The translations under genes were made by a program, and so were the position numbers. A DNA stretch of 64,000 nucleotides, taken from the NCBI RefSeq assembly GCF_963676685.1, contig NC_092346.1, forward strand, positions 71,114,001-71,178,000. Direction: 5' to 3'. This document shows, in pieces, positions 1-63,492 of the stretch; position 1 is the first letter of the stretch; each line of letters starts with the position of its first letter. The notes beneath the pieces were generated by a model, which saw nothing but the letters and a program-made list of their open reading frames with translations, was not told the origin of the DNA and did not search any database. Source of the DNA: Mytilus edulis (Eukaryota).

Positions 1-460
1 CCTTATCTTTTCGCCTTTGTTAACGCATTATTATTAATATTATTAAATTTGATGCGACTGTCGTACAAGTGAGATGTTTGGTGCTGTAAAACCAGATTCA
101 ATTCACCCTTTTCTACATTATACAGTTTCTGACGAATTCGATGGTGTCAAAAGTCCTTATAAGGGCAATATCCAATGAACAAATAATTGACCTCTTCACC
201 TTATCTTTTCGCCTTTGTTCACGCATCATTATCATTATTATAAAATTTGATGCGACTGTCGTACAAGTGAGAAGTTTAGCGCTGTAAAACCAGATTTAAC
301 CCACCATTTTCTACATTTGAAAATGCCTGTACCAAGTCAGGAATATGCCAGTTGTTGTCCATTTCTTTGATGTGTTTTGTCATTTAATTTTGCCATGTGA
401 TTAGGGACTTTCCGATTGAATTTTCCTCGGAGTTCAGTATTTTTGTGATTTTACTTTTTA
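1..460 (+). repeat. Dispersed ~250-bp repeat (probable 3' end/pseudo-LTR of PLE family B), with a local ~198-bp-offset partial duplication
   Basis: GATGCGACTGTCGTACAAGTGAGA...AAAATGCCTGTACCAAGTCAGGAATATG...TTTGTGATTTTACTTTTT recurs at ~9110-9345, 47624-47760(-), 53915-54150 and 57900-58140; 1-115 repeats at 199-315. Confidence 0.8.
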
Positions 461-1185
461 GACCAGGAAATGAATAGGATTTTGCTTTGCCAAAAAAATC
501 ACAAAAAAGCAGTGAACGCAAATCTATCAGGAGTGGATCCTGGATTTGTTTTTAAAGGATGTTATTCAAGAAAACAACATATCTTGGACGATTTTATTTT
601 TTTAAAATACGCCTTTGATATACTTTGATTATAATTAAGATTGGTTCGGAATCTTCAAACAATACAGTATAAAATTGAGAATGGAAATGGGGAATGTGTC
701 AAAGAGACAACAACCCGACCAAATAAAAAACAACAGCAGAGGGTCACCAACAGGTCTTCAATGTAGCGAGAAATTCCCGCACCCGGAGGCGTCCTTCAGC
801 TGGCCCCTAAACAAATATATACTAGTCCAGTGATAATGAACGCCATACTAATTTCCAAATTGTACACAAGAAACTAAAATTAAAATAATACAAGACTAAC
901 AAAGGCCAGAGGCTCCTGACTTGGGACAGGCGCAAAAATGCGGCGGGGTTAAACATGTTTGTGAGATCTCAACCCTCACCCTATACCTCTAACCAATGTA
1001 GAAAAGTAAACGCATAACAATACGCACATTAAAATTCAGTTAAAGAGAAATCCGAGTCTGATGTCAGAAGATGTAACCAAAGAAAATAAACAAAATGACA
1101 ATAATACATAAATAACAACAGACTACTAGCAGTTAACTGACATGCCAGCTCCAGACTTCAATTAAACTGACTGAAAGATTATGAT

Positions 1186-1259
1186 TTCATCATATGAACA
1201 TCAGGCACAATCCTTCCCGTTAGGGGTTTAGTATCATACCATCATAACATATATGAGAA
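1186..1259 (-). promoter_or_regulatory. SECIS element (form 2) in the PLE 3' UTR
   Basis: Minus strand: ttctcatat-atgtt-ATGA-tggtatgatact-AAA-cccctaacggg-aa-ggattgtgcc-TGA-tgtt-catatgatgaa: helix I, AUGA/GA quartet, ~10-bp helix II, unpaired AAA and apical mini-stem. Confidence 0.8.
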
Positions 1260-1306
1260 GAACATAACCCGTGTCATGCCAACAACTGTTTTTAGAATAA
1301 ATGTGT

Positions 1307-2908
1307 TTAGTTCCGATGCAAAGACCTTATCAGTGACTCAATATTAACGCCAAAATATGCAATCTTTAATGACTTGACAACAGTATCGTAATTATATCCC
1401 TTCTTAATAAGTCTATTCAAAGGTTTTGTAAGTTTCTGAGGTGAATACTGACACCTTTGTGCTTTATAAAGAATATTTCCATTAAAAATTGAATGTGAAA
1501 TACCTGAACGTATTAGAAGTCTGCATGTTGAGCTATATTTACGAATGATGTCTTTATACCGATGATAAAATTTAGTAAATGTTTTGACAAGTTTGTGATA
1601 TCGAAAACCCTTGTGTAATAATTTTTCAGTAATACATAAATTTCTCTCGTTAAAATCTAAAACATTGTTACATACACGAGCGAATCGTACAAGTTGAGAT
1701 ATATAAACACCGTAAGATGGTGACAAGGGAACGTCACCATCTAAAAACGGATAATTAACGATAGGAAATGAGAAATCATCCCTTTTATCATAAATTTTAG
1801 TATTCAGCTTTCCATTTGTGATATAGATATCAAGATCGAGAAAAGGGCAGTGGTCATTGTTAGTATTAGCTTTATTTAAAGTAAGTTCAACAGGATAAAT
1901 TTCATTAATATACATACTGAAGTCGTCATTATTGAGAGCCAAAATATCATCCAAATATCTAAAAGTATTATTAAATTTGTTTATCAGATGTTGTTTCGAT
2001 GGGTCTTTGCTTATTTTTGTCATAAATTGTAACTCATAACAATACAAAAACAGGTCCGCAATAAGTGATGCACAGTTAGTCCCCATTGGAATTCCGATAA
2101 TCTGACGATATACGGAATCCCCAAAGCGAACAAAAATGTTATCTAGTAAACATTCAAAGGCATATATAGTATCAAAGCATGTCCAATTAACATAGTTTTT
2201 TTGTTTATTGCTACTAAAAAATTACCTAAAAGAGTTTGAACATATATATTCACATTCTGATTTTTTGAATGCCCATTTAATTAGGTGTGTGAATTTTTTC
2301 TTAATGAGAATGTGAGGCAATGTGGTATACAGGGTAGAAAAATCAAAACTTTGAACAGATTCAAAATCACCAATATAAGCATGCAATTTATCAAGTACTT
2401 CCAACGAGTTCTTGACACTCCAAAAGTAATATATTCCACTATTTTCGAAGGCCTTATTTGAACAATTTATTATCAGGTTTTTAATTGTACCAAGTGTGCT
2501 GGTAAGAAGAATAGACAATTTAGTAGTTGAACAATGGTTTGAAGACGAAATAAATCTATATTTGTAAGGGGTTTTGTGTAGCTTCGGAAGCCAATACATA
2601 GTTGGGACTTTCATTGTATTTGGCTCTGCTTGTAAAGCGGTGGCTAAAAGTTTATGTTTGTTACAGATTTCGTTTTCTGAAAATGGAGTCAGTTGGAATG
2701 TTGGTGAATTGGTGATTTCCTTTTTCAGAACCTCAATGTAAAATTTACGTCAAACAATAATAAAATTATTAGCAGCTTTATCTGCCGGGACAAAAACAAA
2801 TTCCTTGGCTAGTTCTTTTAGTTTATCTTTGATACGAGAAATAGGTTTATAGTGGTTATTGTTTATAGTAAAATGTTCTTTAAAATGTTGAATACGTATA
2901 TCAACTAT
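1307..2908 (-). pseudogene. PLE reverse transcriptase frame (534 codons) interrupted only by TGA at 2750-2752 (candidate Sec) and TAA at 2222-2224
   Basis: ORFs 2222..2614 and 1307..2086 share a frame; manual translation is open from 2908 to 1307 apart from these two codons. Confidence 0.88.
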
Positions 2909-4879
2909 CTAAACTAAACTCATAAACTGTATAATTAATAGGTTTAATTTTGGTACTATATTTGTAAAATAATGTTAAAATCATTTTGTTAAACTGTTTA
3001 TCTTGCTTTTTTCTTTGGTGCCTTTTTTAATTGAAATTGGTTTCTTTACGATGTCAACTAAAGACATTTGTTGTTGAAAGGTTCAGAAGATAAGAAAATA
3101 GGAATTCCCTGATTAAAAATAAACTATTTGTAACTTTTCGCTTAGTTTATAGTTTTTTTCATAAATAAATTCTATTTTATTTAGACATAAGTCAGGATAT
3201 GAAACAATAATATGTGTCTGTATTATTATTTGATTCTAGTAAAAACGATCAGATGCAGTCAACATAGTCACCAAACTTTTAATTGACTAGCGAAAAAAAA
3301 CACCGTAATATCGGGTTGTGAGATTAAAGGTTAAATTATTGTCAGTTATATTTTGTTTTCTAAAAAAAGTTCTATTGTGAACAATAACGTTCCCTTGGAG
3401 TTTAAGTTAATGCACGATAATGAAAAAAGACGTTAACATAAATAAACAACTAAAAACAAATAGCCATACGTAGTTTTGTTTGCAAGTCAAGACCTACAAG
3501 AGACCATATTATACATACTAATGTTCATATAAAATGCGCAAAACTGAGAGAAAAGCGCATCTGAGGCTCATCCGCGGCTATGGTTTGCTGGTCTTAATGT
3601 GCATTTCCCTTAAAATTATAAAACAGTGAAAGGAAGCTTAGTTAGGTGGATAATACTGTTGTTTATGAAACAATGTTGCGCCTATCAGTCGTCGATGTTT
3701 AGTTAATAAACGGATATAATTATACATATCCACTGTAAATATACCTCTCAATATACTCTTGTTATTGGTTGCTTGCTATTTTATCCAATGAAGAAAAACA
3801 AAATAAAGACAAACAGTTAAGTTCTCAAAAGAACTTCTCTGCACTTTACGTCACAATTATCCTTAGTTTGAACAAATCATAGTTTGTTAAAACAAAACAC
3901 GTTAATTCCAACAAACAGTTCACCACCATCAAAAAAACTTTTTTTTTGGTAGTTTGATACTTTTTTGGTGAATATGCTATTCATCAGATAAGGCAACACG
4001 CTATATTACTTTTCACCTAAACTTATTCCTTTTGGCAATTAAATATGCGGAAGGTGTCATACATTTCCTCTCTGTAAGAAATACATATAGAACACACAAA
4101 GAAAGCAACAGAAGGCTTGAATGAGAACTAAACTTGACTATAAAAACATAATGACTTGGATTGTTCCATTTTGAAAATTTAATTTGTATAGCAACTTTCT
4201 AACAGCACCGGTGCTCTTTTCTTAAATATGACCTGGCTATCCCCCAAATAATACAACATACAGTGTACCAGGATGTGTGTTGTAGCTTCTTTACTTATAT
4301 TTTTATTTGTTATGTTTATTAGTCACCATCAGCTCCTTATTAACATCTAGATTCATCTAAATATATGTGTCGTTCCACTCTGATTTTTTTTTTTGTTCAT
4401 GACTTTTCGGCGGATAAGACTTTTTCAAATATTAATTGTTACCATGGACAACACTATTGAAGAGGGAACAACTAACCATTGTTCTGCAGTACGTGCATTA
4501 AAATCAGGTTTATTATCAGGATCTTACGTAGCATAAAAAACAGTAATATCAAACTGTAATCACTTAAGGACTCATCATATTGCTTTTCTTTTGGTCTTCG
4601 TGTTGTCTTTCCTTTACGACTTACATGACGTGATAGGTCCGTTCTTTTTTTAATTTTAAATGAATATGTGATAATCAGTCTATCTTAGTAAATATTATCA
4701 CTAGTAAGGGACTTTCCTTTTTGAATTTTCATCGGAGTTCAGTATTTTTGTGATTATACTTTTAACTGTTATTGTCAGACATTCAGTTCGGAAAAACAAA
4801 TCTTAACGGGCTTTGGGAACATCAAACAATCACCAATTAACGCCTTTCACCCTTAATTAAATTGAGTGTTTACAAATTT

Positions 4880-11334: not shown

Positions 11335-12783
11335 TTATTCCACATCCATATCTGGTTCTTGATAGAGAGGTAAGTCCTTTGGTTTGTAATCTTCATCATC
11401 AGCTGTAGAACCATCATCATTCTCTTGTGAATCATCTGTCTTTTCGTCATCATCGGTATTGTCTTGTGAATCATCTGTCTTTTCGTCATCTTCATCACTC
11501 TCATCACTGTCTATGTAAACCCATGGTTGGAAGTTTTTTTGGTGCATCTGCTCCAATAACGCTGCCTCTTCTCTCAATTTGTTGAACAAACTGATTCTTT
11601 TATCCCATCCATATTTTCTCTCACTTTTCTCACTTTCAATCAGAAGATCAATATAATCTTTATCACTGAGTGGATTTGGTCTTAGAGCAATGTCATGTAA
11701 CTTATTGATGAGGAGACGGACCTCGTGAACCATCTTCATTACATCTAAACCAAGAGTTGAAAAAGCTGTTTTCACTTTTCCAAGAACAGATTTATGTTTT
11801 TCTGCTTCTTTCTGAGCGACTTCATACTTTTTCTTTAGTTCATCATAAGTCTTCGTGACTTTCATGGTGTAAGTGTCAAATCTGAATGAATTATTTTTGT
11901 GAATATTCCAGTGACAGTGCATTGGACATATGGTACACTTTTCACCATCAATGGCGGCACAGTTTTGTTTGTTTTTGTCGTCAGGAATGCCACATGGGAA
12001 ATGACATGTTCTGTTACATGCCATACAGTTAGTAACATAAACTCCAGGTTCAAGGTCAATCTGATACATGTGAACCTCGTCCACTTCATATGTAAAATCC
12101 TTCTTTGCCTTTATATCCTCCTTATGCCTCTTTAGAATTTCTTTTTCCTGTTTTATAGTATTGAGTTTATTCATACCATCCGCAATCTGCTTCTGTAACC
12201 CTTGAATAGTAGTCTCAAGTCTCTTTCTTAGCTGTAATACTTCTGATGTTAGCAATAAACTTTTAGATTCCACTGTTCTCAACTCATCAAAGAAAGTTTT
12301 GAAGCTTTCTCTTCCCATTTTCCAAAATAAATTTCCCATTTCTGCTTCAGCTTGGTTTTCAGGTGATGCATATAATGCTGAATTATTAAACTTATAAGAT
12401 TTTTGATAAGGCACATTAGCTGCCTTCAAGGCTGCCCTAACTGGTGGTTCATTGGCATCTGCAAATGTTATTAGAACAAAAATATTAGATTTAATATCCT
12501 GACCGAAAACAGATAAGATCTGATCAAATATGTACCTCTGTGGTGGAGTGAGTTTACCAAGAGGGGCTTGTGTAACAAAACACACTGCATCAAGACATGT
12601 AATCCCCTGACGTCCAGGTGTGGTGAAAAATTCTCTGATCTGATCAACTATTCTCTTGTCACGTGGTATACCCCTAGTATCACCAAATCCAGGAGTATCT
12701 ATGATGTTTAGGGTATAATCTATGGTACTACCTTCCATCTTGTTAATTGTATAACATGTGATCCATTCTGTTTGAGATTCAGA
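11335..12783 (-). CDS. Terminal exon: GTPase G2/G3 region (SQT, IIDTPGFGDT, LITFAD, FNNS), Cys/His cluster, coiled coil, acidic tail
   Basis: 467-aa ORF extended to the acceptor at 12784-12785; CMACNRTCHFPC...C...CTICPMHCHWNIH. Confidence 0.93.
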   Translation of the reverse strand, partial: SESQTEWITCYTINKMEGSTIDYTLNIIDTPGFGDTRGIPRDKRIVDQIREFFTTPGRQGITCLDAVCFVTQAPLGKLTPPQRYIFDQILSVFGQDIKSNIFVLITFADANEPPVRAALKAANVPYQKSYKFNNSALYASPENQAEAEMGNLFWKMGRESFKTFFDELRTVESKSLLLTSEVLQLRKRLETTIQGLQKQIADGMNKLNTIKQEKEILKRHKEDIKAKKDFTYEVDEVHMYQIDLEPGVYVTNCMACNRTCHFPCGIPDDKNKQNCAAIDGEKCTICPMHCHWNIHKNNSFRFDTYTMKVTKTYDELKKKYEVAQKEAEKHKSVLGKVKTAFSTLGLDVMKMVHEVRLLINKLHDIALRPNPLSDKDYIDLLIESEKSERKYGWDKRISLFNKLREEAALLEQMHQKNFQPWVYIDSDESDEDDEKTDDSQDNTDDDEKTDDSQENDDGSTADDEDYKPKDLPLYQEPDMDVE

Positions 12784-15700: not shown

Positions 15701-18700
15701 AAATTCAAAACACAAGTTCTTATTTTTGCAAAATATATTCCAATGCAATTTTCCAGATCATAAAAATATTGCAATAATTTCTGAATTCAGAATATTCAAT
15801 GCATTACAAATGTCTTAACTATTCAGGGTTTTGATTAGACTGCAATATACCTGATCAAAATACACATTTCCTATTTTTAGCAAGCTCATTGACTGTATAA
15901 TGCAATCAAAATTCAAAACACAAGTTCTTATTTTTGCAAAATATATTCCAATGCAATTTTCCAGATCATAAAAATATTGCAATAATTTCTGAATTCACAA
16001 TATTCAATGCATTACAAATGTCTTAACTATTCAGGGTTTTGATTAGACTGCAATATACCTGATCAAAATACATATTTCCTATTTTTAGCAAGCTCATTGA
16101 CTGTATAATGCAATCAAAATTCAAAACACAAGTTCTTATTTTTGCAAAATATATTCCAATGCAATTTTCCAGATCATAAAAATATTGCAATAATTTCTGA
16201 ATTCACAATATTCAATGCATTACAAATGTCTTAACTATTCAGGGTTTTGATTAGACTGCAATATACCTGATCAAAATACACATTTCCTATTTTTAGCAAG
16301 CTCATTGACTGTATAATGCAATCAAAATTCAAAACACAAGTTCTTATTTTTGCAAAATATATTCCAATGCAATTTTCCAGATCATAAAAATATTGCAATA
16401 ATTTCTGAATTCACAATATTCAATGCATTACAAATGTCTTAACTATTCAGGGTTTTGATTAGACTGCAATATACCTGATCAAAATACACATTTCTTATTT
16501 TTAGCAAGTTCATTGACTGTATAATGCAATCAAAATTTAAAACACAAGTTCTTATTTTTGCAAAATATATTCCAATGCAATTTTCCAGATCATAAAAATA
16601 TTGCAATAATTTCTGAGTTCACAGTATTCAATGCATTACAAATGTCTTAACTATTCAGGGTTTTTATTAGACTGCAATATACCTGATCCAAATACACATT
16701 TCCTTGTTTTAGCAAGTTCATTAACTGTATCAATGTTTTTAGTTAGTGGCAGCTTGTAAACAACTGGATGACCATCTTCTATCTTGGTAGCCTTTGGAAT
16801 GAGAGATCTTGCCAAGGATGATACTGTTGACAATTTGATAGGAAGACAAAATGGCCCCTCTTCGCCGTCTTCATTCACAGCACGAACTTTGAATTCATAC
16901 TTGGCCTCAGCTTTCAAGTCCTTTACTTTAACAGTTCTTTCTGCTCCCTCTGACAAAACAGATACCCACTTCCCTTTCCCCTTCTTACATTCCTTATATT
17001 TTATTTCATAATGGTCTACAGATTTGACGCCTCGTTTTGGGCGATTCCATTTTAATGTAATACTATTTGATGAAGTAGCTACAGATGTTGGTACACTTGG
17101 ATCAGATGGAACATCATCATTGTCAGACTCTTCATCTGCTGCCTTTTCTGGGGCTTTTGTTTCCTTTGGACTTTTGGACTGCAACCCACTGCCTATATCA
17201 AATATAAAATGTTTTAATTTAAACGTTTCATCAAGAAGGTATTTTGTTTGTTGTTAGTTGTGAGAACCTTTTTCTTATTTTTCTTAAGGTTTCTGATATT
17301 GTACTCTGTACTTTAAATAACTTCACTTTTTGTTGACTTATTATTTTCCCCCCTTTTTATCCAAAGTCAAATTTAAATTATGTCAGTCAAATGTGAAGTT
17401 TCTAGTTATCAATAATCCTTTTACTCTACTAGTAAACCAATTCTTTTTTAATTTCCAATAGGTAAATTAGCTTTCAGGTCTATTTGAGACCTTTTGAACA
17501 GGGTTCTTTTTATCCATTACATCGATCTTTCAATTTAAAATAGCAAGAAAACTACTTCAAATCTAAATTGCAACCTTATTATGATAATATTAAATGGCTG
17601 TTTGTTCAAACTGTCATAACAGCCAAACATCTGGCCTCACGGTCATAAAACTTTCGAGCATGGTTTCATGTTTCGAGCACGTTTTTTGTGCTCCGAGCAC
17701 TGAGCAAAGTTTTATGCTCTCACTGCCAAAAAATTACAAAAATACACAATTTTTTTTTTTACTTTTTCAAAGGGGAGAGAAACCCTATTTTGAAATGACC
17801 TTTTTTATATTGATAATTAAACTTTTAAAGATATTAAGAAGGATCCTCACAAGTTGTGTAACGTTTGTGCTCATTCTCTTTTAGATTTTCAGCAAAACCC
17901 TTTAATTTCCAGCACCACTCCTATTTTTCTCAGCTGAAACCTTACATGTGATAATATGAAATAATTTTGGAGAATTTTTAATCAGTATAAAGTGGAGATA
18001 CTATACATTTCTATAATAAACTTTTGAACTTTTTTTTGGTTATAAAATAAAAATATAATTGAATTTTTGAAAACCATATATACATATCCAACATTGAAAA
18101 TATATCTGTGGTAATCCCTGTGTTATCTTACCTGATGGTTGGTCTTCTCTAGAAGATTCCTGTTTGGTCTGGTCTTTTTTACTCTCTGGTTTATCTTTCT
18201 TTTCTAAAATGATAATTAATTATGTGTAAATATTGATATTATATATATGTATAGAACCACTAATTCGGGCCTGGTCTGAAAGAACATACAAGAAAGGAGT
18301 ACATATTTAAAAAACAAAATAGTTCCTACGCATAGCTGTAACTTCTTAAATTTGTAAAATATTTTGGTAATTTTGGTATCAAATGAAGGGTGAATTACTG
18401 TGGATCATTGTAGAGCCTTTGTTGAATGATTATATTAAATAATAAAAAAGTTGTGTATGAAATTGAAACAGGAAGGCGTTTATTGCCTGATTTTCAGATC
18501 TGAAGTACCTGTTTTAGTACTTCCAAACTGCTGGGAACCAGTGCGGTCTTATATGCAATTAAAGGTATGATGATTTTTCTAGCATGGGTAACCAAAAGGT
18601 ATTGTTTTGACATAGCATGAGTGTCATTTCATTTAAACTTAAAACGAAAGAGCTATAAAAGCTTGAAAATAAGGAATTTAACATAGAAAGCAATGGGACC

Positions 18701-45541: not shown

Positions 45542-47623
45542 TCTGCTATGCTTTTTTATTTTTAAACGTTATGAAACTCGACACCAACTTGAACATATTG
45601 ACCTAATAATCTAGTGCGAAGAAGAATTCACCATTCAAGGTATTTAAAACCTTTTAATTATTTTCGTAATTCTCCTTGATTTTTGTTATTACATTTTACT
45701 TTACATTGAACGGGTTGTTCCTATCACTGCGTCTATTAGATTTCTCCTACTGTGTGATTAAAATTCTTTTCTGATTATATTGAGAGAAAAAAAAACAATA
45801 GACAGATAAGTCTTTGAAAGGATTATATACAAAGGGTTATTCAATTATGTCTCTTTTTATTTAGATATTTTATCGACAATCGTCTTGTAATTGGTTTAGG
45901 TTTTATTTACAGGTAAAACATATTTTATTTACCCAAAGTTGGTTGGACACAATTAATCAAACTTGTGTAATATTTTCGAGACTGCTTAGCCATATTTGGC
46001 ACATTTTTGATAATTTTGGGTTTTAATGCTCTTCAACTTCGTATTTAATTTGACTTTACAATTGTTTTGATCTGAGTGTCACTGCCAAGTCTTATGCCGA
46101 CGAAAAAGTGTGTCTGGTGTACATTATCATAAGCCTGGTATTCTTGATGAGTTTTTATAACCACTGGGTCTATTCTTTTGCTGATGAACGTTTCGGGTAT
46201 AACCACTTCAGAAACCTTCTAATACATTGTTATTTTTAGTTTTTTCTGTAATGAAAAAAAGACAATATGCTAGACATACTTGCTGCAAGTGTACAAGAGA
46301 GGGAGGCAAAAGATATAAAAGATACATTAAAATTCATAAAGGTCAAAAATAAATTGAAAAAGCAATATTAACAAAAGAAAAAGACTAAAAGAAAAACAAC
46401 AGTATACAAAACAAAGAAAATTAAAGACTGAGCAACACGAAGGGTATGCATATCCTGTTCAACATATGACATCCATCGAATGATATGATTTAAGTGGTGA
46501 ACTTATTTTTTTTTTTTTTTAGAATATGAGCGTTCAACGATGAAGGTGGAGTTAGGAATCGGACACACCACTCATTTTATTATACACGTACATTTCAGCA
46601 ATAAATATATCACCAGCCTTGAAGTCAGCACTTCTCAATTGATATGAATTAGCATTGATATGGTCATACTTGTAAATTAACTATTTTAATAAACTTACAA
46701 TTGCCCGAAACATTAATGATTTTCTACCAAAGGAATATATTACCTTAGATATATTTGGTAAAACCTTTCGCAATATTCGGTCCTCAATGCTCTTTAACTT
46801 CATACTGTAATAAGCCTTTAATTTTTTAGTCGAGTGTCTTTGGTGTGTCCTTTATAGATGAAACGCGCGTTTGGTTTACAAAATTATCCCCTTGGTATCT
46901 TTGATGAGTCTATTTAAAGGTATTTTAATCGGAGCGATGCTCCAATTGCAGTTTAATCTAAATGAAAATCTAAATTCTAAATTCATTTGATTGGTAATCC
47001 AACAACATTTTCCTCATCTATTGCAACTAAGATTTTAAAATACAAGCACGTGTTTCGGGATCTCAATATTGACGAATTTAAAATGGCCATAGTTATATTA
47101 GAGTCCGTTTCTGTGTGTGTTACATTTTAATGTTGTGTTTCTGTCGTGTCGTCGTTCTCCTCTCATATTTGATGCGTTTTCCTCAGTTTTAGTTTGTAAC
47201 CCGGATTTTTTTCTCAATCGATTTACGAGTTTCGAACAGCGGTATACTGCTGTTGCCTTTATTTAAGTATAAACCTTCTGTCAGAATCAGTGCTAGATCT
47301 CAATATAGATATATTCCAGCTTTCCACGTTATTGCAAATGACATGAACATGGTCTAAAACACTTTCACGCGAAATGTGATATCCTAAGGCCCGAAATATT
47401 ATGAGCCTAGATCCAGTAATTGGAAACACAACTTTAAAATACTAATGAATCAATTTGAGGATTATGACAGGCAATGGTCTAAGCCATAAAAATAATTCAA
47501 AGATACCCTTTCCGAAAAGGTTATTACAGTGAGGTCATTGAATCTCATTAGAAATTTGAATGAGTCTATAAATACATATGCTATGTGGATCTTTAAGGAG
47601 CCAAATGTCGCTATTACAAATAT

Positions 47624-48047
47624 TGACAACTGTCATATTCCTGACTTGGTACAGGCATTTTCTAATGTAGAAAATGGTGGATTGAACCTGGTTTTATAGC
47701 TAGCTAAACCTCTCACTTGTATGACAGTCGCATCAAATTCCATTACATTGTCAACGATGCGTGAACAAAACAAACATACTCAAAGAGTAAAAATGTCAAA
47801 AATAGGGGTACAGCAGTCAACATTGTGTTATCATCTTAATCACTATAAAAACAACAAATGTAACGAAGAAGCACAAAAAGGCATACATCAAGTTTAACAT
47901 CCTCATTTTGCTTATCTTATACGATTTTATGTATCTATGTAAAGTCTAACCGTAAAGGATGGAAAGTTTTCAGTACTGGTGTAAAATTGCGCGTTTGAAA
48001 TTCGCACAGGTAGACATAACATAATTTTGTCGTTCAAAGTATGACGT
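47624..48047 (-). mobile_element. PLE family B 3' end/pseudo-LTR, interrupted by the family A copy (continues ~49360-49626)
   Basis: Reverse complement of the common repeat; GTCGTTCAAAGTATGA motif on both sides of the insertion. Confidence 0.65.
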
Positions 48048-49358
48048 AAAATTGAGAATGGAAATGGGGAATGTGTCAAAGAGACAACAACCCGACCAAA
48101 TAAAAAACAACAGCAGAGGGTCACCAACAGGTCTTCAATGTAGCGAGAAATTCCCGCACCCGGAGGCGTCCTTCTGCTGGCCCCTCAACAAATATATATT
48201 AGTCCAGTGATAATGAACGCCATACTAATTTCCAAATTGTACACAAGAAACTAAAATTAAAATAATACAAGACTAACAAAGGCCAGAGGCTCCTGACTTG
48301 GGACAGGCGCAAAAATGCGGCGGGGTTAAACATGTTTGTGAGATCTCAACCCTCCCCCTATACCTCTAACCAATGTAGAAAAGTAAACGCATAACAATAC
48401 GCACATTAAAATTCAGTTCAAGAGAAGTCCGAGTTTGATGTCAGAAGATGGAACCAAAGAAAATAAACAAAATGACAATAATACATAAATAACAACAGAC
48501 TACTAGCAGTTAACTGACATGCCAGCTCCAGACTTCAATTAAACTAACTGAAAGATTATGATTTCATCATATGAACATCAGGCACAATCCTTCCCGTTAG
48601 GGGTTTAGTATCATACCATCATAACATATATGAGAAGAACATAACCCGTGTCATGCCAACAACTGTTTTAAGAATAAATGTGTTTAGTTCCGATGCAAAG
48701 ACCTTATCAGTGACTCAATATTAACGCCAAAATATGCAATCTTTAATGACTTGACAACAGTATCGTAATTATAATATAAAGGTTTTGTAAGTTTCTGAGG
48801 TGAATACTGACACCTTTGTGCTTTATAAAGAACATTTCCATAAAAAAATTGGATGTGAAATACCTGAACGTATTAGAAGTCTGCATGTTGAGCTATATTT
48901 ACGAATGATGTCTTTATACCGATGATAAAATTTAGTAAATGTTTTGACTAGTTTGTGATATTGAAAACCCTGGTGTAATAATTTTTCAGTAATACATAAA
49001 TTTCTCTCGTTAAAAACATTGTTACATACACGAGCGAATCGTACAAGTTGAGATATATAAACACCGTAAGATGGTGACAAGGGAACGTCACCATCTAAAA
49101 ACGGATAATTAACGATAGAAAATGAAAAATCATCCCTTTTATCATAAATTTTAGTATTCAGCTTTCCATTAGTGATATAGATATCAAGATCGAGAAAAGG
49201 GCAGTGGTCATTGTTAGTATTAGCTTTATTTAAAGTAAGTTCAGCCTTTTATCATAAATTTTAGTATTCAGCTTTCCATTAGTGATATAGATATCAAGAT
49301 CGAGAAAAGGGCAGTGGTCATTGTTAGTATTAGCTTTATTTAAAGTAAGTTCAACAGG
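48048..49358 (-). mobile_element. Second Naiad-type PLE family A copy, 5'-truncated, with deletions and a ~110-bp terminal duplication; SECIS at ~48563-48636
   Basis: Near-identical to 670-1895; 49135-49243 repeated at 49245-49353. Confidence 0.9.
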
Positions 49359-49647
49359 ACGGCATACATAAATGCAGAGTCACGTAAAGTATAACAAAAA
49401 ACAGACTTAACAGTAAAAGTAATAATAATAAATAAAATAATTTTGTGGTTCAAAGTATGACGGGATACATAAGTACAGAGTCACGTCAAATGTATATCAT
49501 AAAAAACAGACTTAACAGAAAAAGTAGTATTAAAGAATAAAATAGTTTTGTCATTCAAAGTATGACATGATCCATAAGTAAAAGTAATATTAATAAATGA
49601 AATAATTTTGTCGTTCAAAGTATGATGTTTTAATTAAACTGATTGAA

Positions 49648-50232
49648 AGCGACAACAACCCGACCATAAAACAGACAACAGCCGAAGGCCACCGATGGGT
49701 CTTCAATGTAGCGAGAAACTCACGCACCCGGAGGCGTCCTCCAGCTGGCTCCTTAAAAATATGCATACTAGTTCAGTGATAATGGACGTCATACTAAACT
49801 CCGAATTATACACAAGAAACTAAAATTAAAAATCACACAAGACTAACAAAAGACCAGTGGTTACTGACTTGGGACAAGCGCAAAATTGCGACGGGGTTAA
49901 ACATGTTTATGAGATCTCAACCCCCCATACCTCTAGCCAATGTAGAAAAGTAAACGCATAACAATACGCACATTAAAATTCAGTTCAAGAGAAGTCCGAG
50001 CCCGATGTCGGAAGATGTAACAAAAGAAAATAAACAAAATGACAATAATACATAGATAAGAACAGACTACCAGCAGTTGACTGACATGCCAGCTCCAGGC
50101 CTCAATTAAACTGATTGAAAGATTATGTCTTCATCATATGAATATCAGGCACAACCCCTCCCGTTAGGGGTTTAGTATCATACTATCATAAAATATATGA
50201 GACGAACATAACCCGTGTCGTGCCAACAACTG
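49648..50232 (-). mobile_element. Solo pseudo-LTR of a family A subfamily; SECIS at ~50130-50203
   Basis: Diverged copy of ~705-1288 with ATGA/AAA/TGA core retained. Confidence 0.85.
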
Positions 50233-50797
50233 TAAGTATTTTTATGATTCAATAAAAACTACGACGACTTTTTAACATTGCTTTTTACATTTTTTCATTA
50301 TGAGCGTATCTACGGTCCACTTAGGTTTTTGACTTGCATCACGTTCATGAATACTCAAGGAATGTCATGTACATATGATTGTGGGCCGTATGTTCTCCCA
50401 TAGTTGAAAATGCAGAAAAATGTTTGGAAATTTGTTTGCCCTTTTCGCAACTCTTGAGGAGTTTTCAGCAACAAAGCCGTACAAAAATTTAATCTTGGTA
50501 TCTTTAATGAGTTTAGTATGATAAAGATCACATATTCCTATTTTTTCACTATACAACAATACTAAAAAAAGAATAAAAACAAGCATGCTGTGAGACAATT
50601 TAATATTTTCACTAATAACTATAATAACTTACAAAAAACCTACATTCTTTACATTACATAACATGAGAAAACATTTAAGAGAACTGGAAACTTTCCTTGT
50701 AGTGAAGGACATACGTGTACTTTTTTTAAAATAAATAAATAAATGCTTGTTAAAGTCAAAACTGTTCACATCTTCATCATATATGACTGTTCCTTTA

Positions 50798-55643: not shown

Positions 55644-58600
55644 ATGGTAAGTTTTTTAAATACTGATTATATAAAAAAAAAAATCACATAAAATGTGTAT
55701 TTTGTTACAAGTCTTTTGTACCAAATGAATATGCATTCGTTGTATGATATTAACTTCACGTCTTAGCAAAAAAAAAATAACATTGTGTAAAATTTATTAT
55801 GGATCAAAAATTGGTTGGACATTTTTTAAGTAAGAAGCATACCAAATGACGTATAAAGTATTTTAGTTATATGAATCGACAGTTATATAAAGAAGACACC
55901 AGGATATCTTATTTTGAAATATATTTTTTCAGGCTTCTTCATTAGGCCAGGCAGAAAAAGATGGTACGTAGAAACTCACCCGATATTTAAACAAAACCGT
56001 TTTTAAATGTTTTATTTAATACATATTAACTTCAATAAGAAGGAACTTTTTTTATTTTTTATTTTTATTTTTATTTTTCCATGAGCGTTTATTTATTTAA
56101 AAGACTTATTCGTTTTTGCCATATTGGATCAGACAGAATAAAATACTAAGGCTTTTCCACCTCAGGAAAAGATTACCTTAGCTGTATTTGGCAAAACGTT
56201 TTGGTCCTCAATGCTCTTCAACTTCGTACTTTATTTAGCCTTTTTAACATGTTGTTTATACGAGCGTCACTGATGGGTCTTTTGTAGACGAAACGCTCGT
56301 CTGGAGCAAATATAAAATTTCAATCCAAGTATCTATGATGAGTTTACAGTACTTACATTTCATTCTTAAAGGTAAAAAATAAACAGATTATTCAAATATA
56401 TTAAAACACATATCTGTATTCGTCATTTATAACAACACCTATTCTACATTTTAAATCTGTTGTTTCAGAAATCAGAGATGTGTATGATTTGTATGACATA
56501 GAGAAAACAGGAAAATTACCACAGGATGACTATGCTACTATAGTTCGTGGTATGGGACACAACCCCTCAGAGAAAGAGCTACAAGAAATGTTTCAATCAA
56601 CAAGACCAGATCGTAAGTGTAACAATAATTTATCTTACCTCCTATACATTTCTAGGAAAATGATTGGTTAAAAGCGTCCTCGTGGAAACCGTGTATATTT
56701 GATATTAGGTTAGTAGGGAGGCGGGGCTTATTTCATACACGGTTAGTAGTGGAGTTACGTCCCTTTATATTCCATATAAGGTTGTAGGGAGGAGGGGCTA
56801 ATTTCATACACGGTTAGTAGTGGTGTTACGTCCCTTTAGAAAAACAAAACAGTACTTAGAAAAAATCTTAAAGGTTTCAACAGACGAAGAAATTGATGAT
56901 TAAGATTGAAATAAATTTATAAAACACTAAAAATCTAACAAAAAAACAAGTTGTCAATGTTGGCATCTGTTTTTTTTATTGGATAAATGGAGTAGTTTCT
57001 TAATCATGTTAATGCTAACTGTAATGAAGACTTGCTCATTTTGATAGGTCACTGGTCTAAATTTTACACGTTAAGATAGTCGGTAAGATAAATTCGTTAC
57101 ATAGTGTGCTAGTGACGTAATACGGTATATATGGGGTCAGTAAATTCCATATGGGGATTCGAGCTTCGCTCTCACCCCATATGGAATTTACTGACCCCAT
57201 ATATACCGTATTAGGTCACTAGCACACTATGTAACTAATAATACGGTATATCATACTATCATACTGTAACCATGCAAGTCATTTAGAATATGTTTAAATA
57301 TAATAATTCTTAGCTGTAAAATATATTCCCCAAGACTGTAATATCATAACATTGAATATTTTCGGAACTAGTGATTATTATGCCGAAGTTTCTTATTGAC
57401 AACATATTTGTTGAACTTGGAGGTAGACATTCTCAACAAATTGTCGGCATTCCTATGGAAACGAAGTGTGCGCCTCTCTTTGCCGACCTCTTCTTATTTT
57501 CATATGAGTCGGTGTTACTTCAGACACTTATTTATAAAATACAAGACATATTAATGAAACACTATCTTTTAATTTCACATTCAGATGTATTGATGATGTT
57601 CTTTCCATTAAAAATCTAAACTTTTGTAACTGGATTCCATTAAATAAAGGCAACAATAGTATACCGCTGTTCAAATGCCATAAATCGATTGAGAGAAAAC
57701 AAATCCGCTAAATCCCCCAGAACTAGAAAATAAAGAAACAACAGACACGGCTTCCTCCGCCTCATTTAGACGTCAAATTTGACATACGAGGTCATCTCAG
57801 TATAATGTTTTTTTTTATAGTGATTAGGATTGTAACACAATGTTGACAGCTGTACCCTAATTTTGACATTTTTACCTATTATGTCTGGGTTTTTTTTGTT
57901 CTCACATCGTTGTCAATATAATGGAATTTGATGCGACTTCCATACAATGAGAAGTTTAGCTAGATATAAAACCAGGTTTAGTCAATCATTTTTTACATAA
58001 GAAAATGCCTGTACCAAGTCAAAATACGACCGTTGTTATCCATTCAATAGATGTGTTTGAACTTTTGATTTTGCCATTTGACTACGGACTTTATGTTTTG
58101 AATTTTCCTGGGAGTACTTTATTTTTGTTGTTTTACATTTTTCATGTACGAAACACGAGTTTTGCGTACACGGTTATAAGCCTGGTATCTTTGACGACTT
58201 TATGTAAGCTAGTATATTTTCCAATATTGATGGAGTTCGATGAGTGGATGCTGGAAAATGTATTCTTAATCCCACTTTGGTGTGTTTTTATCATGATGGT
58301 TTTCAATCTGATTCTTACCGTTTTGGGATGAACGATTTTAGTTTGATTTGGATAAGACTTTCCTTGCTGACAAAATCCTGCTCAGTAATTTAAATTAATT
58401 TGCTCTAGACTTAGCGGAGAAATAAAAAGCTGTCTTCATCAGAAAAGTGTTTTTTCATCGAATTACCAGGGCGTAAGAAGAGTTCAAATCTATCCCTATA
58501 TCCAGATATGAATAAAATTAACGTTACACTGTAGATAGAATTAGGAATTTAATTTCTTAATTCAAGTATATTATTAAACAATTTCCAGAAAGATTTCCCT

Positions 58601-62199: not shown

Positions 62200-63492
62200 G
62201 TATGGACAAAAGAAGGTTTCTGACTTTTCAATTTAACTCATTACGGCCAGTTACATATCTTTTACGACGTTCGACGAAAGAATTGTCCATTAAATTGACA
62301 AAAATTCTGTCCGCAGTGAAAGAGAGTCTTCTAAAATACTGTGAAACTGTTTACTGGCGTAGTGGTATTAACCATATCTGAATTCTAAAAAAAACTCTAA
62401 AGAACTTCTGGATAATTTTAAATCTCGATATTTCTCTGAAATTAGTTTTAAAACCCTGTATACCACCATTCCCAATGTGAAATTGAAAAATTGTTAAGAA
62501 ATAATCCACAATTTTTTTCAACATAAAAATGGTAGCATACGCTATAAATTTATGACTTTGGGATACCATACGGCATATCTTGTTAATAGTGAAAAAAAAG
62601 TCAAACATGCTACACAGAGGAACAAGAAGTCAGTATGCTGGAGTTTCTTATTGACAACATATTTGTTGAATTTGGAGGTAGATTTTTTCAACAAATTGTC
62701 GGCATTCCTATGGGACGAACTGTGCGCATTTCCTTGCCGACCTCTTCTTATTTTCATATGAGTCGGAGTTCCTTCAGACACTTATCAAAAACAAGATGAT
62801 CAAAGAAGCCAGATCATTTAATTTCACATCCAGATATATTTATGATGTTCTTTTCATTAACAATCCAAACTTTTCTGATTGGGTTCCATAGATATATCCT
62901 CCAGAACTAGAATTTAAAGAAACAACAGACACGGCTTCCTCTGCCTCGTTTTTAGACTTATACCTCGAATTTGACTTAAACGGGCATCTCAGTACCAGAA
63001 TCTATGACAAATTTTAATTTTGAAATTATCAATTTCCCCTACCTTAGTAGCAATATACCAACTTTACCTGCATATTGGATATACATTTCCCAACTCATTC
63101 GGTATTTAAATGCTTGAAGCTGCTACTCAGACTTTGTTAAACATCACCAGTGTCTGAGCAAAAAGTTGATGAACCAGGGTTATGTCAAAGAACGTCTCGT
63201 CCTTTTTCTAAAAAAAAGTTTATCAAAGATACCAAGACCTTGTTGATAATTATTCCGTATCAACTTCACAAATAATACACGATGGACTTGAAGTATAGAT
63301 CATAGGTACTGACGTTGTTTATCATCTTAATACCATGTTATATTATTATTTTATTTGTCTTTGTAAATTATTACTTTTACTGTATGGTCTATTTTTAGTA
63401 CTATCCATTTGACGTGGCTCGGTACTTATACATCCCATCATAGTGTTATTGTGCTATGGTAAAAAAAAAGTATTCTTGTCTTCGTTTTTGCC
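62200..63492 (+). mobile_element. Decayed Naiad-type PLE family B (RT region plus start of 3' UTR)
   Basis: Frameshifted LYTTIP, EFLIDNIFVEFGG, VGIPMGTNCA, ADLFLFSYE, ASFLDL, YISQLIRY and KLMNQGY motifs; stop near 63298. Confidence 0.85.

What the first reader, a model, noticed from the sequence alone, without database searches (positions are those of the whole stretch)
1186..2908. Candidate selenoprotein-encoding retrotransposon: in-frame UGA at a conserved Cys plus SECIS in a Naiad-type PLE
Seen: the RT frame reads VPADKAANNFIIV-[TGA 2750-2752]-RKFYIEVL and stays open on both sides; about 50-120 nt past the stop the minus strand forms a form-2 SECIS (AUGA, 10-bp helix, AAA, apical mini-stem, UGA, helix I). 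Known: this position is normally Cys in the PADKAxNNxxxVC motif as I recall it; Naiad PLEs have an N-terminal GIY-YIG (consistent with none after the RT here), and Sec-encoding Naiads have been reported in spiders and clams. Inference: RT translation needs Sec recoding, which would tie retrotransposition to selenium status. I cannot tell whether this lineage is already described. Caveat: this copy also has a TAA at 2222-2224 and is 5'-truncated, so it is itself dead.
Basis: partly seen in the sequence, partly recalled or inferred. Interest (0 to 1): 0.9.

Follow-up and report, generated by a model that had tools for sequence, protein, structure and literature searches.

The report
Dead copy of selenocysteine-coding Naiad retrotransposon
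This is a broken, 5'-truncated copy of a very abundant Penelope-like "Naiad" jumping gene whose full-length copies need four UGA codons read as selenocysteine, helped by a SECIS hairpin in the element's own 3' end; that kind of element was described in clams and spiders in 2021, so this adds a host lineage and some detail, not a new principle.

Summary
On the minus strand the RT frame reads ...PADKAANNFIIV-TGA(2752-2750)-RKFYIEVL... and stays open. A private TAA lies at 2224-2222, the true stop is TAA 1309-1307, and a SECIS_1 match lies at 1255-1191.

The copy (window 2910-669) is one 5'-truncated member of a young family, about 99% identical between copies. The DKA-site region occurs 1,438 times in the genome and the SECIS core 7,028 times. 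TGA is fixed at this codon: 619 TGA, 2 TGG, 3 other, 0 TGT/TGC.

Full-length copies are about 3.96 kb and form partial tandems. They carry a 1,008-codon frame with no TAA or TAG and four TGAs. All four sit at cysteines that are invariant in 36-45 distant homologues.

Variants shared between copies are mostly synonymous, unlike singletons (p=1.3e-4; after the UGA alone p=2e-4). The SECIS shows compensatory changes against a sister family that is 75% identical. The host has tRNA-Sec genes.

This matches the Sec-Naiads of Craig et al. [quoted passage not shown] I rate it a new member of a known kind. Earlier follow-ups in this scan reached the same reading on other DNA of this genome. Sec incorporation itself was not tested.

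The parts
669..2910 (-). 5'-truncated copy of the Sec-Naiad family (element positions about 1723-3964 of a 3.96-kb unit)
   Evidence: 29 other copies align to window 2910..~669 at 98.3-98.9% identity with a common 3' end. Their 5' ends vary and their flanks are unique. This copy has 19 private differences.
1310..2908 (-). Remaining coding part: the C-terminal half of the EN-RT ORF (about codons 475-1008), with the DKA motif and RT motifs (FDFSTLY, GIPMGTNCA, RYLDD)
   Evidence: Translation. 3,228 homologues at E<=1e-10.
2750..2752 (-). In-frame TGA, the predicted Sec codon, 8 residues after DKA
   Evidence: Genome-wide tally with exact flanks: 619 TGA, 2 TGG, 2 AGA, 1 GGA, 0 TGY. Cys in 45/45 distant homologues.
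2222..2224 (-). Inactivating TAA, almost private to this copy (TCA in most copies)
   Evidence: 2 of 30 copies have TAA and 28 have TCA.
1307..1309 (-). Genuine ORF stop (TAA)
   Evidence: TAA in 30/30 aligned copies.
1191..1255 (-). SECIS element (AUGA, 10-bp helix, AAA, 3-bp mini-stem, UGAU), starting 52 nt after the stop
   Evidence: Rfam SECIS_1 at 32.3 bits, E=0.0011, cut-off 35. Compensatory changes against the sister family. A copy of the family elsewhere scores 41.4 bits.
669..1190 (-). Rest of the 3' UTR/tail. In full-length insertions this part forms the pseudo-LTR.
   Evidence: Partial tandem copies of the last 283-1,700 nt sit upstream of full-length copies. The 3' end ...TTCTCAATTTTA is fixed.
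48046..49243 (-). Second, shorter truncated copy of the same family, with an identical SECIS at 48632-48568
   Evidence: blastn 96.6% identity. SECIS_1 at 32.3 bits.
49646..50233 (-). 3' fragment of an older subfamily (88.6% identical), with a SECIS at 50199-50135
   Evidence: SECIS_1 at 28.4 bits.

Best explanation
The window holds a dead insertion (5'-truncated, with one nonsense mutation) of a recently active Naiad-clade Penelope-like retrotransposon. Its single ORF encodes an N-terminal GIY-YIG endonuclease followed by a reverse transcriptase, and it is a selenoprotein gene.

In full-length copies four UGA codons replace strictly conserved cysteines:
- the second Cys of the C-x4-C-xx-C finger;
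- the Cys before GIY;
- the first Cys of the CCHH finger;
- the Cys 8 residues after DKA.

A SECIS in the element's own 3' UTR would recruit the host Sec machinery so that ribosomes read through all four UGAs.

Shown here: the anatomy, fixation of TGA, Cys homology, purifying selection downstream of the UGA, SECIS covariation, and host tRNA-Sec genes. Inferred: actual Sec insertion, and therefore dependence of transposition on selenium supply.
For: 1. TGA is fixed at the reported codon: 619 of 624 exact-flank copies, none with TGT or TGC. It is 30/30 in aligned copies.

2. Three of 8 full-length loci have a 1,008-codon frame with no TAA or TAG and exactly four TGAs. All copies with distinct sequence context keep TGA at the other three sites: 15/15, 18/18 and 16/16.

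3. All four sites align with Cys in every non-gapped row of 45 full-length homologues of 27-37% identity: 36/36, 41/41, 41/41 and 45/45. If four one-step TGA mutations fell at random, all would hit Cys codons with p of about 0.004.

4. Variants shared by 2 or more copies have N:S = 23:34, against 191:90 for singletons (Fisher p=1.3e-4). No shared variant creates a stop, while 17 singletons do. For codons 528-1007 alone, which lie after the UGA, the counts are 10:23 against 79:37 (p=2e-4). Shared changes fall at third codon positions in 34 of 57 cases, against 105 of 281 for singletons.

5. SECIS_1 hits lie at the homologous 3'-UTR place in this family (32.3 bits), in an 88% subfamily (28.4 bits) and in a sister family 75% identical at the DNA level (28 bits). 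Six pairs have changed on both sides, and 92.6% of cells pair against at most 50% when the partners are slid. AUGA, AAA, the mini-stem and UGAU are invariant. One family copy scores 41.4 bits, above the cut-off.

6. A family only 54% identical in protein (L057) has TGA at the same DKA+8 site, at the pre-GIY site and at the CCHH site, in a frame open for 984 codons.

7. The host has five tRNA-Sec genes above the cut-off, with anticodon TCA.

8. Craig et al. 2021 report the same UGA positions plus a SECIS in four Naiad families.
Against: - The SECIS of this copy scores below Rfam's curated cut-off (32.3 against 35 bits), and its folding energy is not unusual (z=-1.0).
- The selection signal is not significant for codons 103-526 (12:9 against 102:47, p=0.33), so translation of the segments between the UGAs is supported mainly by the open frame.
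- Only 35 copies could be analysed.
- One SECIS would have to serve four UGAs lying 1.5 to 2.9 kb upstream, with unknown efficiency.
- Pfam does not recognise the ORF pieces themselves.
Confidence: 0.85

Rival explanations
1. The TGAs are real stops. On this view the family is a non-autonomous or dead lineage copied in trans by Cys-coding Naiads, and the SECIS-like hairpin is chance.
For: The genome holds a huge Naiad load: 54,861 first-look candidates for a Naiad RT, so helper enzymes could exist. The SECIS score is below Rfam's cut-off.
Against: Four stops all fall at invariant Cys positions and nowhere else in 1,008 AT-rich codons. Purifying selection acts on shared variants downstream of the UGA. 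The same sites are TGA in a family 54% identical. The SECIS shows covariation. The best matches to the Cys-bearing relative P0003 in this genome are all this TGA family, at 80% identity.
Confidence: 0.05
2. The UGAs are read through, but not as Sec. Near-cognate insertion of Cys or Trp, or another programmed read-through, would do it, with the hairpin serving as a stimulator or having some other role.
For: Nothing here identifies the inserted residue. TGG occurs in rare copies, and some public relatives are predicted with W at these sites.
Against: The hairpin has all the SECIS-specific motifs at canonical spacing and they are invariant across families. Exclusive use of Cys positions is the signature of Sec/Cys exchange. 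The W residues are more simply explained by gene callers reading TGA under genetic code 4; that explanation is my inference and was not tested.
Confidence: 0.07
3. The ORF is expressed in separate pieces by re-initiation after each UGA, for example from the Met after the DKA site, so no recoding is needed.
For: An ATG lies 45 codons after the UGA (the 130-aa and 435-aa ORF calls). Selection is clearest downstream of that UGA.
Against: The DKA motif and the N-terminal RT region would be cut off from the catalytic core. This does not explain why the breaks are always TGA at Cys positions, nor why a SECIS is conserved.
Confidence: 0.03

Closest known systems
[quoted passage not shown] 2021, PMC8557442)
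   Same: N-terminal GIY-YIG followed by RT. UGA at the Cys before GIY-YIG, at the first Cys of the CCHH finger and at the Cys 8 aa after DKA. A SECIS just after the stop. Partial tandems, 5' truncation and high copy number.
   Different: This family has a fourth UGA at the second Cys of the CX2-5CxxC finger. In the paper that site is UGA only in a spider family. The SECIS starts 52 nt after the stop (1-21 nt in the paper) and has the mini-stem form (the paper calls its four type I). The host has 14 large scaffolds in 1.37 Gb, which points to a mussel. That identification comes from earlier scan notes and I did not verify it. The sequences could not be compared directly because the paper's supplements are not held.
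Naiad_Sdum and Naiad_Smim, the spider Sec-Naiads (same paper)
   Same: UGA within the CX2-5CxxC finger, before GIY-YIG and after DKA; a SECIS is present.
   Different: The spider families lack the CCHH-site UGA and are said to lack the IFD. The paper infers an independent origin for them.
Selenoprotein P
   Same: Several UGA codons are decoded as Sec from 3'-UTR SECIS signals, and this is especially developed in bivalves (Baclaocos et al. 2019, as cited).
   Different: SelP is a host transport protein with two SECIS elements and a Sec-rich tail. Here a mobile element carries one SECIS, and its Sec residues sit in zinc-finger-like and RT motifs.
Canonical Penelope-like elements (Penelope/Poseidon, Neptune, Nematis)
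   Same: Related RT, GIY-YIG endonuclease, pseudo-LTR tandems and 5' truncation.
   Different: Their endonuclease is C-terminal, they carry hammerhead ribozymes, their motif is DKG rather than DKA, and they have no Sec codons.

Membership tests
Naiad clade of Penelope-like elements (Craig et al. 2021) | GIY-YIG endonuclease N-terminal to the RT in one ORF | tested here: met
   Full-length copies read ...IIYLLT(U)NKPGCGIQYVGE... at codons 96-115 and RT motifs after codon 520. The aligned homologue P0186 has Pfam GIY-YIG at residues 96-151 and RVT_1 at 653-809. The window copy itself lacks this part because of its 5' truncation.
Naiad clade of Penelope-like elements (Craig et al. 2021) | CX2-5CxxC and CCHH zinc-finger-like motifs in the endonuclease | tested here: met
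   The fingers read C-HAKK-U-LT-C and LT-U-NKPG-C, and the U columns are Cys in all aligned homologues. The two His residues of CCHH were not checked one by one.
Naiad clade of Penelope-like elements (Craig et al. 2021) | KR-rich block, CxC motif, GxKF/Y motif, and DKA instead of DKG | tested here: met
   FRKKRSHGSRTNRNQRKFR, TSCNCS, GPKYRP and PADKAANN were read in a natural full-length copy. DKA is also present in the window copy.
Naiad clade of Penelope-like elements (Craig et al. 2021) | Insertion-in-fingers domain between RT3(A) and RT4(B) | not tested
   The spacing between motifs A and B was not measured against canonical PLEs.
Naiad clade of Penelope-like elements (Craig et al. 2021) | PLE insertion structure: partial tandems (pseudo-LTR), frequent 5' truncation, body of 3.4-4.4 kb | tested here: met
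   The unit is about 3.96 kb, and 283-1,700-nt 3' pieces sit directly upstream of full-length copies. Truncation points range from 184 to 1702, with a fixed 3' end.
Naiad clade of Penelope-like elements (Craig et al. 2021) | No canonical hammerhead ribozyme | tested here: met
   No hammerhead family matched at E<=10 in window 1-4000, and nothing reached gathering score in the whole window.
Naiad clade of Penelope-like elements (Craig et al. 2021) | Insertion bias for microsatellites, e.g. (TA)n | tested here: not met
   The flanks of 35 copies are unique, non-repetitive sequence. The paper describes this as a tendency rather than a requirement.
Eukaryotic selenoprotein gene | In-frame UGA at a position that is Cys in homologues, with a conserved frame downstream | tested here: met
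Eukaryotic selenoprotein gene | SECIS element in the 3' UTR | tested here: inconclusive
   All motifs and the architecture are present and covary, and one family copy scores 41.4 bits. The window copy scores 32.3 bits, under the 35-bit cut-off. SECISearch3 was not available.
Eukaryotic selenoprotein gene | Host Sec-decoding machinery | tested here: met
   Five tRNA-Sec genes at 77-79.6 bits. ARAGORN calls tRNA-SeC with anticodon TCA. SBP2, eEFSec and the other factors were not searched.
Eukaryotic selenoprotein gene | Sec actually incorporated | not testable with these tools
   This needs 75Se labelling, mass spectrometry or ribosome profiling.

The most novel reading that the evidence does not exclude
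Sec use may be ancestral to a broad, diversified clade of bivalve Naiads rather than an oddity of four families, with individual Cys sites switching between UGA and UGY.

- This family has U at DKA+8 and Cys at the first Cys of CxC.
- Its sister family, 75% identical, has the reverse (TGT at DKA+8, TGA at CxC) and keeps the SECIS.
- A family 54% identical has U at both sites.
- Many public predicted proteins stop exactly at these two sites or show W there.

In addition, more than 7,000 truncated copies scatter ready-made SECIS hairpins through this genome. They could seed new host selenoproteins, the pathway Craig et al. proposed.
Probability: 0.45. Interest if true: 0.6.

Novelty: new member of a known kind. 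Interest (0 to 1): 0.4.

Why it matters
Selenoprotein-encoding transposons are so far known from one paper and four families. This family extends them to another host, probably a mussel. It adds evidence that the paper did not give:
- selection on the RT downstream of the UGA within a living family;
- SECIS covariation between families;
- turnover of Sec and Cys between sister families.

It also has a practical side. Standard gene callers cut these ORFs at each UGA or render it as W, so such elements are systematically mis-annotated in bivalve genomes. Thousands of dispersed SECIS copies will also confuse selenoprotein prediction.

Tried and rejected
The selection test therefore rests on 35 copies, and the 41.4-bit SECIS copy could not be read.

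Searches that gave nothing useful:
- Pfam finds nothing in the ORF pieces of this family.
- phmmer against PDB sequences gives only noise.
- The listing of cluster members gave no names or accessions, and the protein atlas gave no useful taxa, so I could not verify the host species. Paper searches for the assembly and for the accession prefix JACCDL found nothing.
- A viral-contig scan found no relatives.
- The paper's supplementary sequences are not held, so there is no direct alignment or tree with Naiad_Scon, Mmer, Sdum or Smim, and the question of single or multiple origin stays open.
- A weak SECIS-like hit in L057 (18.3 bits, E=2.9) is treated as inconclusive.

I tallied codon states across natural copies and used one natural copy only as a coordinate ruler.

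Rejected reading: that the copy is a chance ORF with a chance hairpin (see rival explanations).

Full report
**Observation.** On the minus strand the frame reads ...KELAKEFVFVPADKAANNFIIV, then TGA at 2752-2750, then RKFYIEVLKKEI... It continues to TAA at 1309-1307 and is interrupted only by TAA at 2224-2222. Rfam's SECIS_1 model matches 1255-1191(-), 52-116 nt after the stop, at 32.3 bits and E=0.0011 for the 4-kb search. The curated cut-off is 35 bits. The match has helix I, AUGA, a 10-bp helix II, AAA, a 3-bp apical mini-stem and UGAU. The MFE fold gives the same shape, but its energy is not unusual (z=-1.0). Only the extent needs correcting: the repeat unit runs from 2910 to about 669.

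**What the copy belongs to.** A DNA search of the window's own genome (1.37 Gb, 14 large scaffolds) returned 3,149 first-look candidates, and the 40 that were scored are 98-99% identical to the query.
- All copies share the 3' end ...TTCTCAATTTTA. Their 5' ends vary from element position 184 to 1702, and their flanks are unique. That is the signature of many independent, 5'-truncated retrotranspositions.
- Eight loci fetched with more upstream sequence show a unit of about 3.96 kb. It is often preceded by 283-1,700 nt of another copy's 3' end, forming partial tandems or pseudo-LTRs.
- The window copy differs from the majority of 29 others at 19 of 2,242 positions. It is a young insertion, but it is dead: it lacks the first ~474 codons and carries the TAA, which 28 of 30 copies read as TCA.

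**The full-length ORF.** In three of the eight long loci the frame holding PADKA is free of TAA and TAG for 1,008 codons and contains exactly four TGAs. Read in a natural copy the order of features is:
- a C-x4-U-xx-C finger;
- DIT-U just before the GIY (IIY) motif;
- LLT-U-NKPGCGIQYVGE, where U is the first Cys of the CCHH finger inside GIY-YIG;
- a KR-rich block;
- a CxC motif (TSCNCS);
- GPKYRP;
- PADKAANNIIIV-U;
- the RT motifs FDFSTLY, GIPMGTNCAPL and RYLDD.

These are the diagnostic features that Craig et al. 2021 list for Naiads. [quoted passage not shown]

**Is TGA the family's state?** Pattern counts over the whole genome, with 32 exact flanking bases (one further flanking position left free), give 619 TGA, 2 TGG, 2 AGA, 1 GGA and no TGT or TGC. 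With up to 2 mismatches there are 1,438 matches, against 0 for the reversed control. At the three endonuclease sites every copy with a distinct sequence context has TGA: 15/15, 18/18 and 16/16.

**Are these Cys positions?**
- A full HMMER scan with the 424-residue piece between the third and fourth UGA found 2,758 relatives.
- In an alignment of the 45 relatives that are at least 850 aa long (27-37% identity), all four U columns are Cys in every non-gapped row: 36/36, 41/41, 41/41 and 45/45.
- The closest public relatives that span the site (P0002-P0004, 76-80% identical) read IIIVC or IIVVC.
- About a quarter of the ORF's codons that lie one step from TGA are Cys codons, so four random hits would all land on Cys with p of about 0.004. 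That figure takes no account of their being the published sites.

**Was the ORF translated past the UGA while the family spread?** I compared variants private to one copy, which reflect decay after insertion, with variants shared by 2 or more of 35 independent copies, which arose in replicating lineages.
- Singletons have N:S = 191:90, and 17 of them are new stops. Shared variants have N:S = 23:34 with no stop (Fisher p=1.3e-4).
- For codons 528-1007 alone, the part after the UGA that the window holds, the counts are 10:23 against 79:37 (p=2e-4).
- 60% of shared changes are at third codon positions, against 37% of singletons.
- For codons 103-526 the trend is the same but not significant (p=0.33), and fewer copies reach that far.

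The RT downstream of the UGA was therefore under purifying selection in the lineages that made new copies.

**The SECIS.**
- The same hit recurs in two further truncated copies in this window: 48632-48568 at 32.3 bits, and 50199-50135 at 28.4 bits in an 88% subfamily.
- A metagenome scan with P0003 returned contigs of a sister family 75% identical at the DNA level. It has a SECIS_1 hit (28 bits) at the homologous place, 55 nt after its stop.
- Across the three versions, 6 of 18 pairs have changed on both sides. 92.6% of cells pair, against 29-50% when the partners are slid. AUGA, AAA, the mini-stem and UGAU are invariant.
- A genome-wide SECIS_1 search gave a single hit at genome-level significance, 41.4 bits, above the cut-off. 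It lies 1.52 kb downstream of a listed DKA-site match, which is the family's own spacing.
- The SECIS core occurs 7,028 times in the genome with up to 2 mismatches, about five times the DKA-site count, as 5' truncation predicts.
- The host has five tRNA-Sec genes above the cut-off, with anticodon TCA.

**Relatives with other Sec patterns.**
- L057 (contig JACCDL010850230.1, 54% identical in protein) has a frame open for 984 codons with four TGAs. They lie before GIY, at the first Cys of CCHH, 8 aa after DKA, and at the first Cys of CxC.
- The sister family L055 has TGT at DKA+8. Its frame begins, at the contig edge, with TGA at the first Cys of CxC (U-N-C-ENSSYIY against this family's C-N-C-SNSEYIY). 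That would explain why it keeps a SECIS.
- Among 150 cluster representatives, 7 end exactly 7 residues after DKA, and 7 end exactly one residue before the CxC Cys.
- Several others show W at one or both sites. I take these to be TGA read under genetic code 4 by metagenome gene callers. That is an inference and could not be tested without the DNA.

Together these results suggest a wide Sec-using Naiad clade in which Sec and Cys turn over site by site.

**Comparison with what is known, and verdict.** The kind is published (PMC8557442). Full-text searches found no later paper on Sec-encoding transposons or on Naiads in mussels. This family differs from the clam families by a fourth UGA in the CX2-5CxxC finger, by SECIS spacing and form, and apparently by host.

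Earlier follow-ups in this scan, on other windows of the same genome, reached the same reading and call the host Mytilus. The 14 large scaffolds fit that, but I could not verify the species.

The window copy itself is inert. The link between transposition and selenium supply remains an inference that needs the experiments listed under decisive next steps.

The run and read tools, contig look-up and further genome fetches were unavailable.

Noticed in passing
window 48046-50233 (-): Two more fragments of the same element sit close together. One is a 1.2-kb truncated copy at 49243-48046, preceded by a 115-nt duplicate of its own start at 49359-49245. The other is an older 88%-identical 3' fragment at 50233-49646. 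Each carries a SECIS hit.
   Followed up: partly
window 62605-63201 (+), 57386-57636 (+), 47274-47483 (+): tblastn finds fragments of other, distant Naiad-like RTs, 28-63% identical to this family's protein. The window holds several Naiad lineages.
   Followed up: no
G000:C10:14401393-14442259 and G000:C945: There is a tandem array of at least 45 tRNA-like units with an 895-bp period. Each scores 45.9 bits against the tRNA-Sec model, just under its 47-bit cut-off. The five genuine tRNA-Sec genes score 77-79.6 bits.
   Followed up: no
public proteins P0079, P0087, P0092, P0104, P0108: These predicted Naiad proteins have Trp exactly where other Naiads have the conserved Cys (DKA+8, and in some the first Cys of CxC). 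This is probably TGA translated as W under genetic code 4 by metagenome gene callers, which would flag hidden Sec families.
   Followed up: partly
L055:2-4 and L055 codon at DKA+8: The sister family from a metagenome contig has TGT at the DKA+8 site. It has TGA at the first Cys of the CxC motif and keeps the SECIS, so the Sec and Cys positions are swapped relative to this family.
   Followed up: partly
window 1-320: A tandem repeat of about 198 bp (93% between units) abuts the window start, just beyond the element's 3' flank.
   Followed up: no
window 11335-12738 (-) and 16651-17184 (-): A 467-aa ORF has a weak AIG1/GIMAP-type GTPase match (21 bits, below the cut-off). A 177-aa ORF has a clear fibronectin type III domain (53.7 bits). 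Both are probably host gene exons.
   Followed up: no
window 760-800 (-) within the element's 3' tail: The last ~330 nt of the element are much more GC-rich than the rest, for example the stretch GGGGCCAGCTGAAGGACGCC. This tail is the most abundant part of the family. No Rfam family matches it.
   Followed up: no
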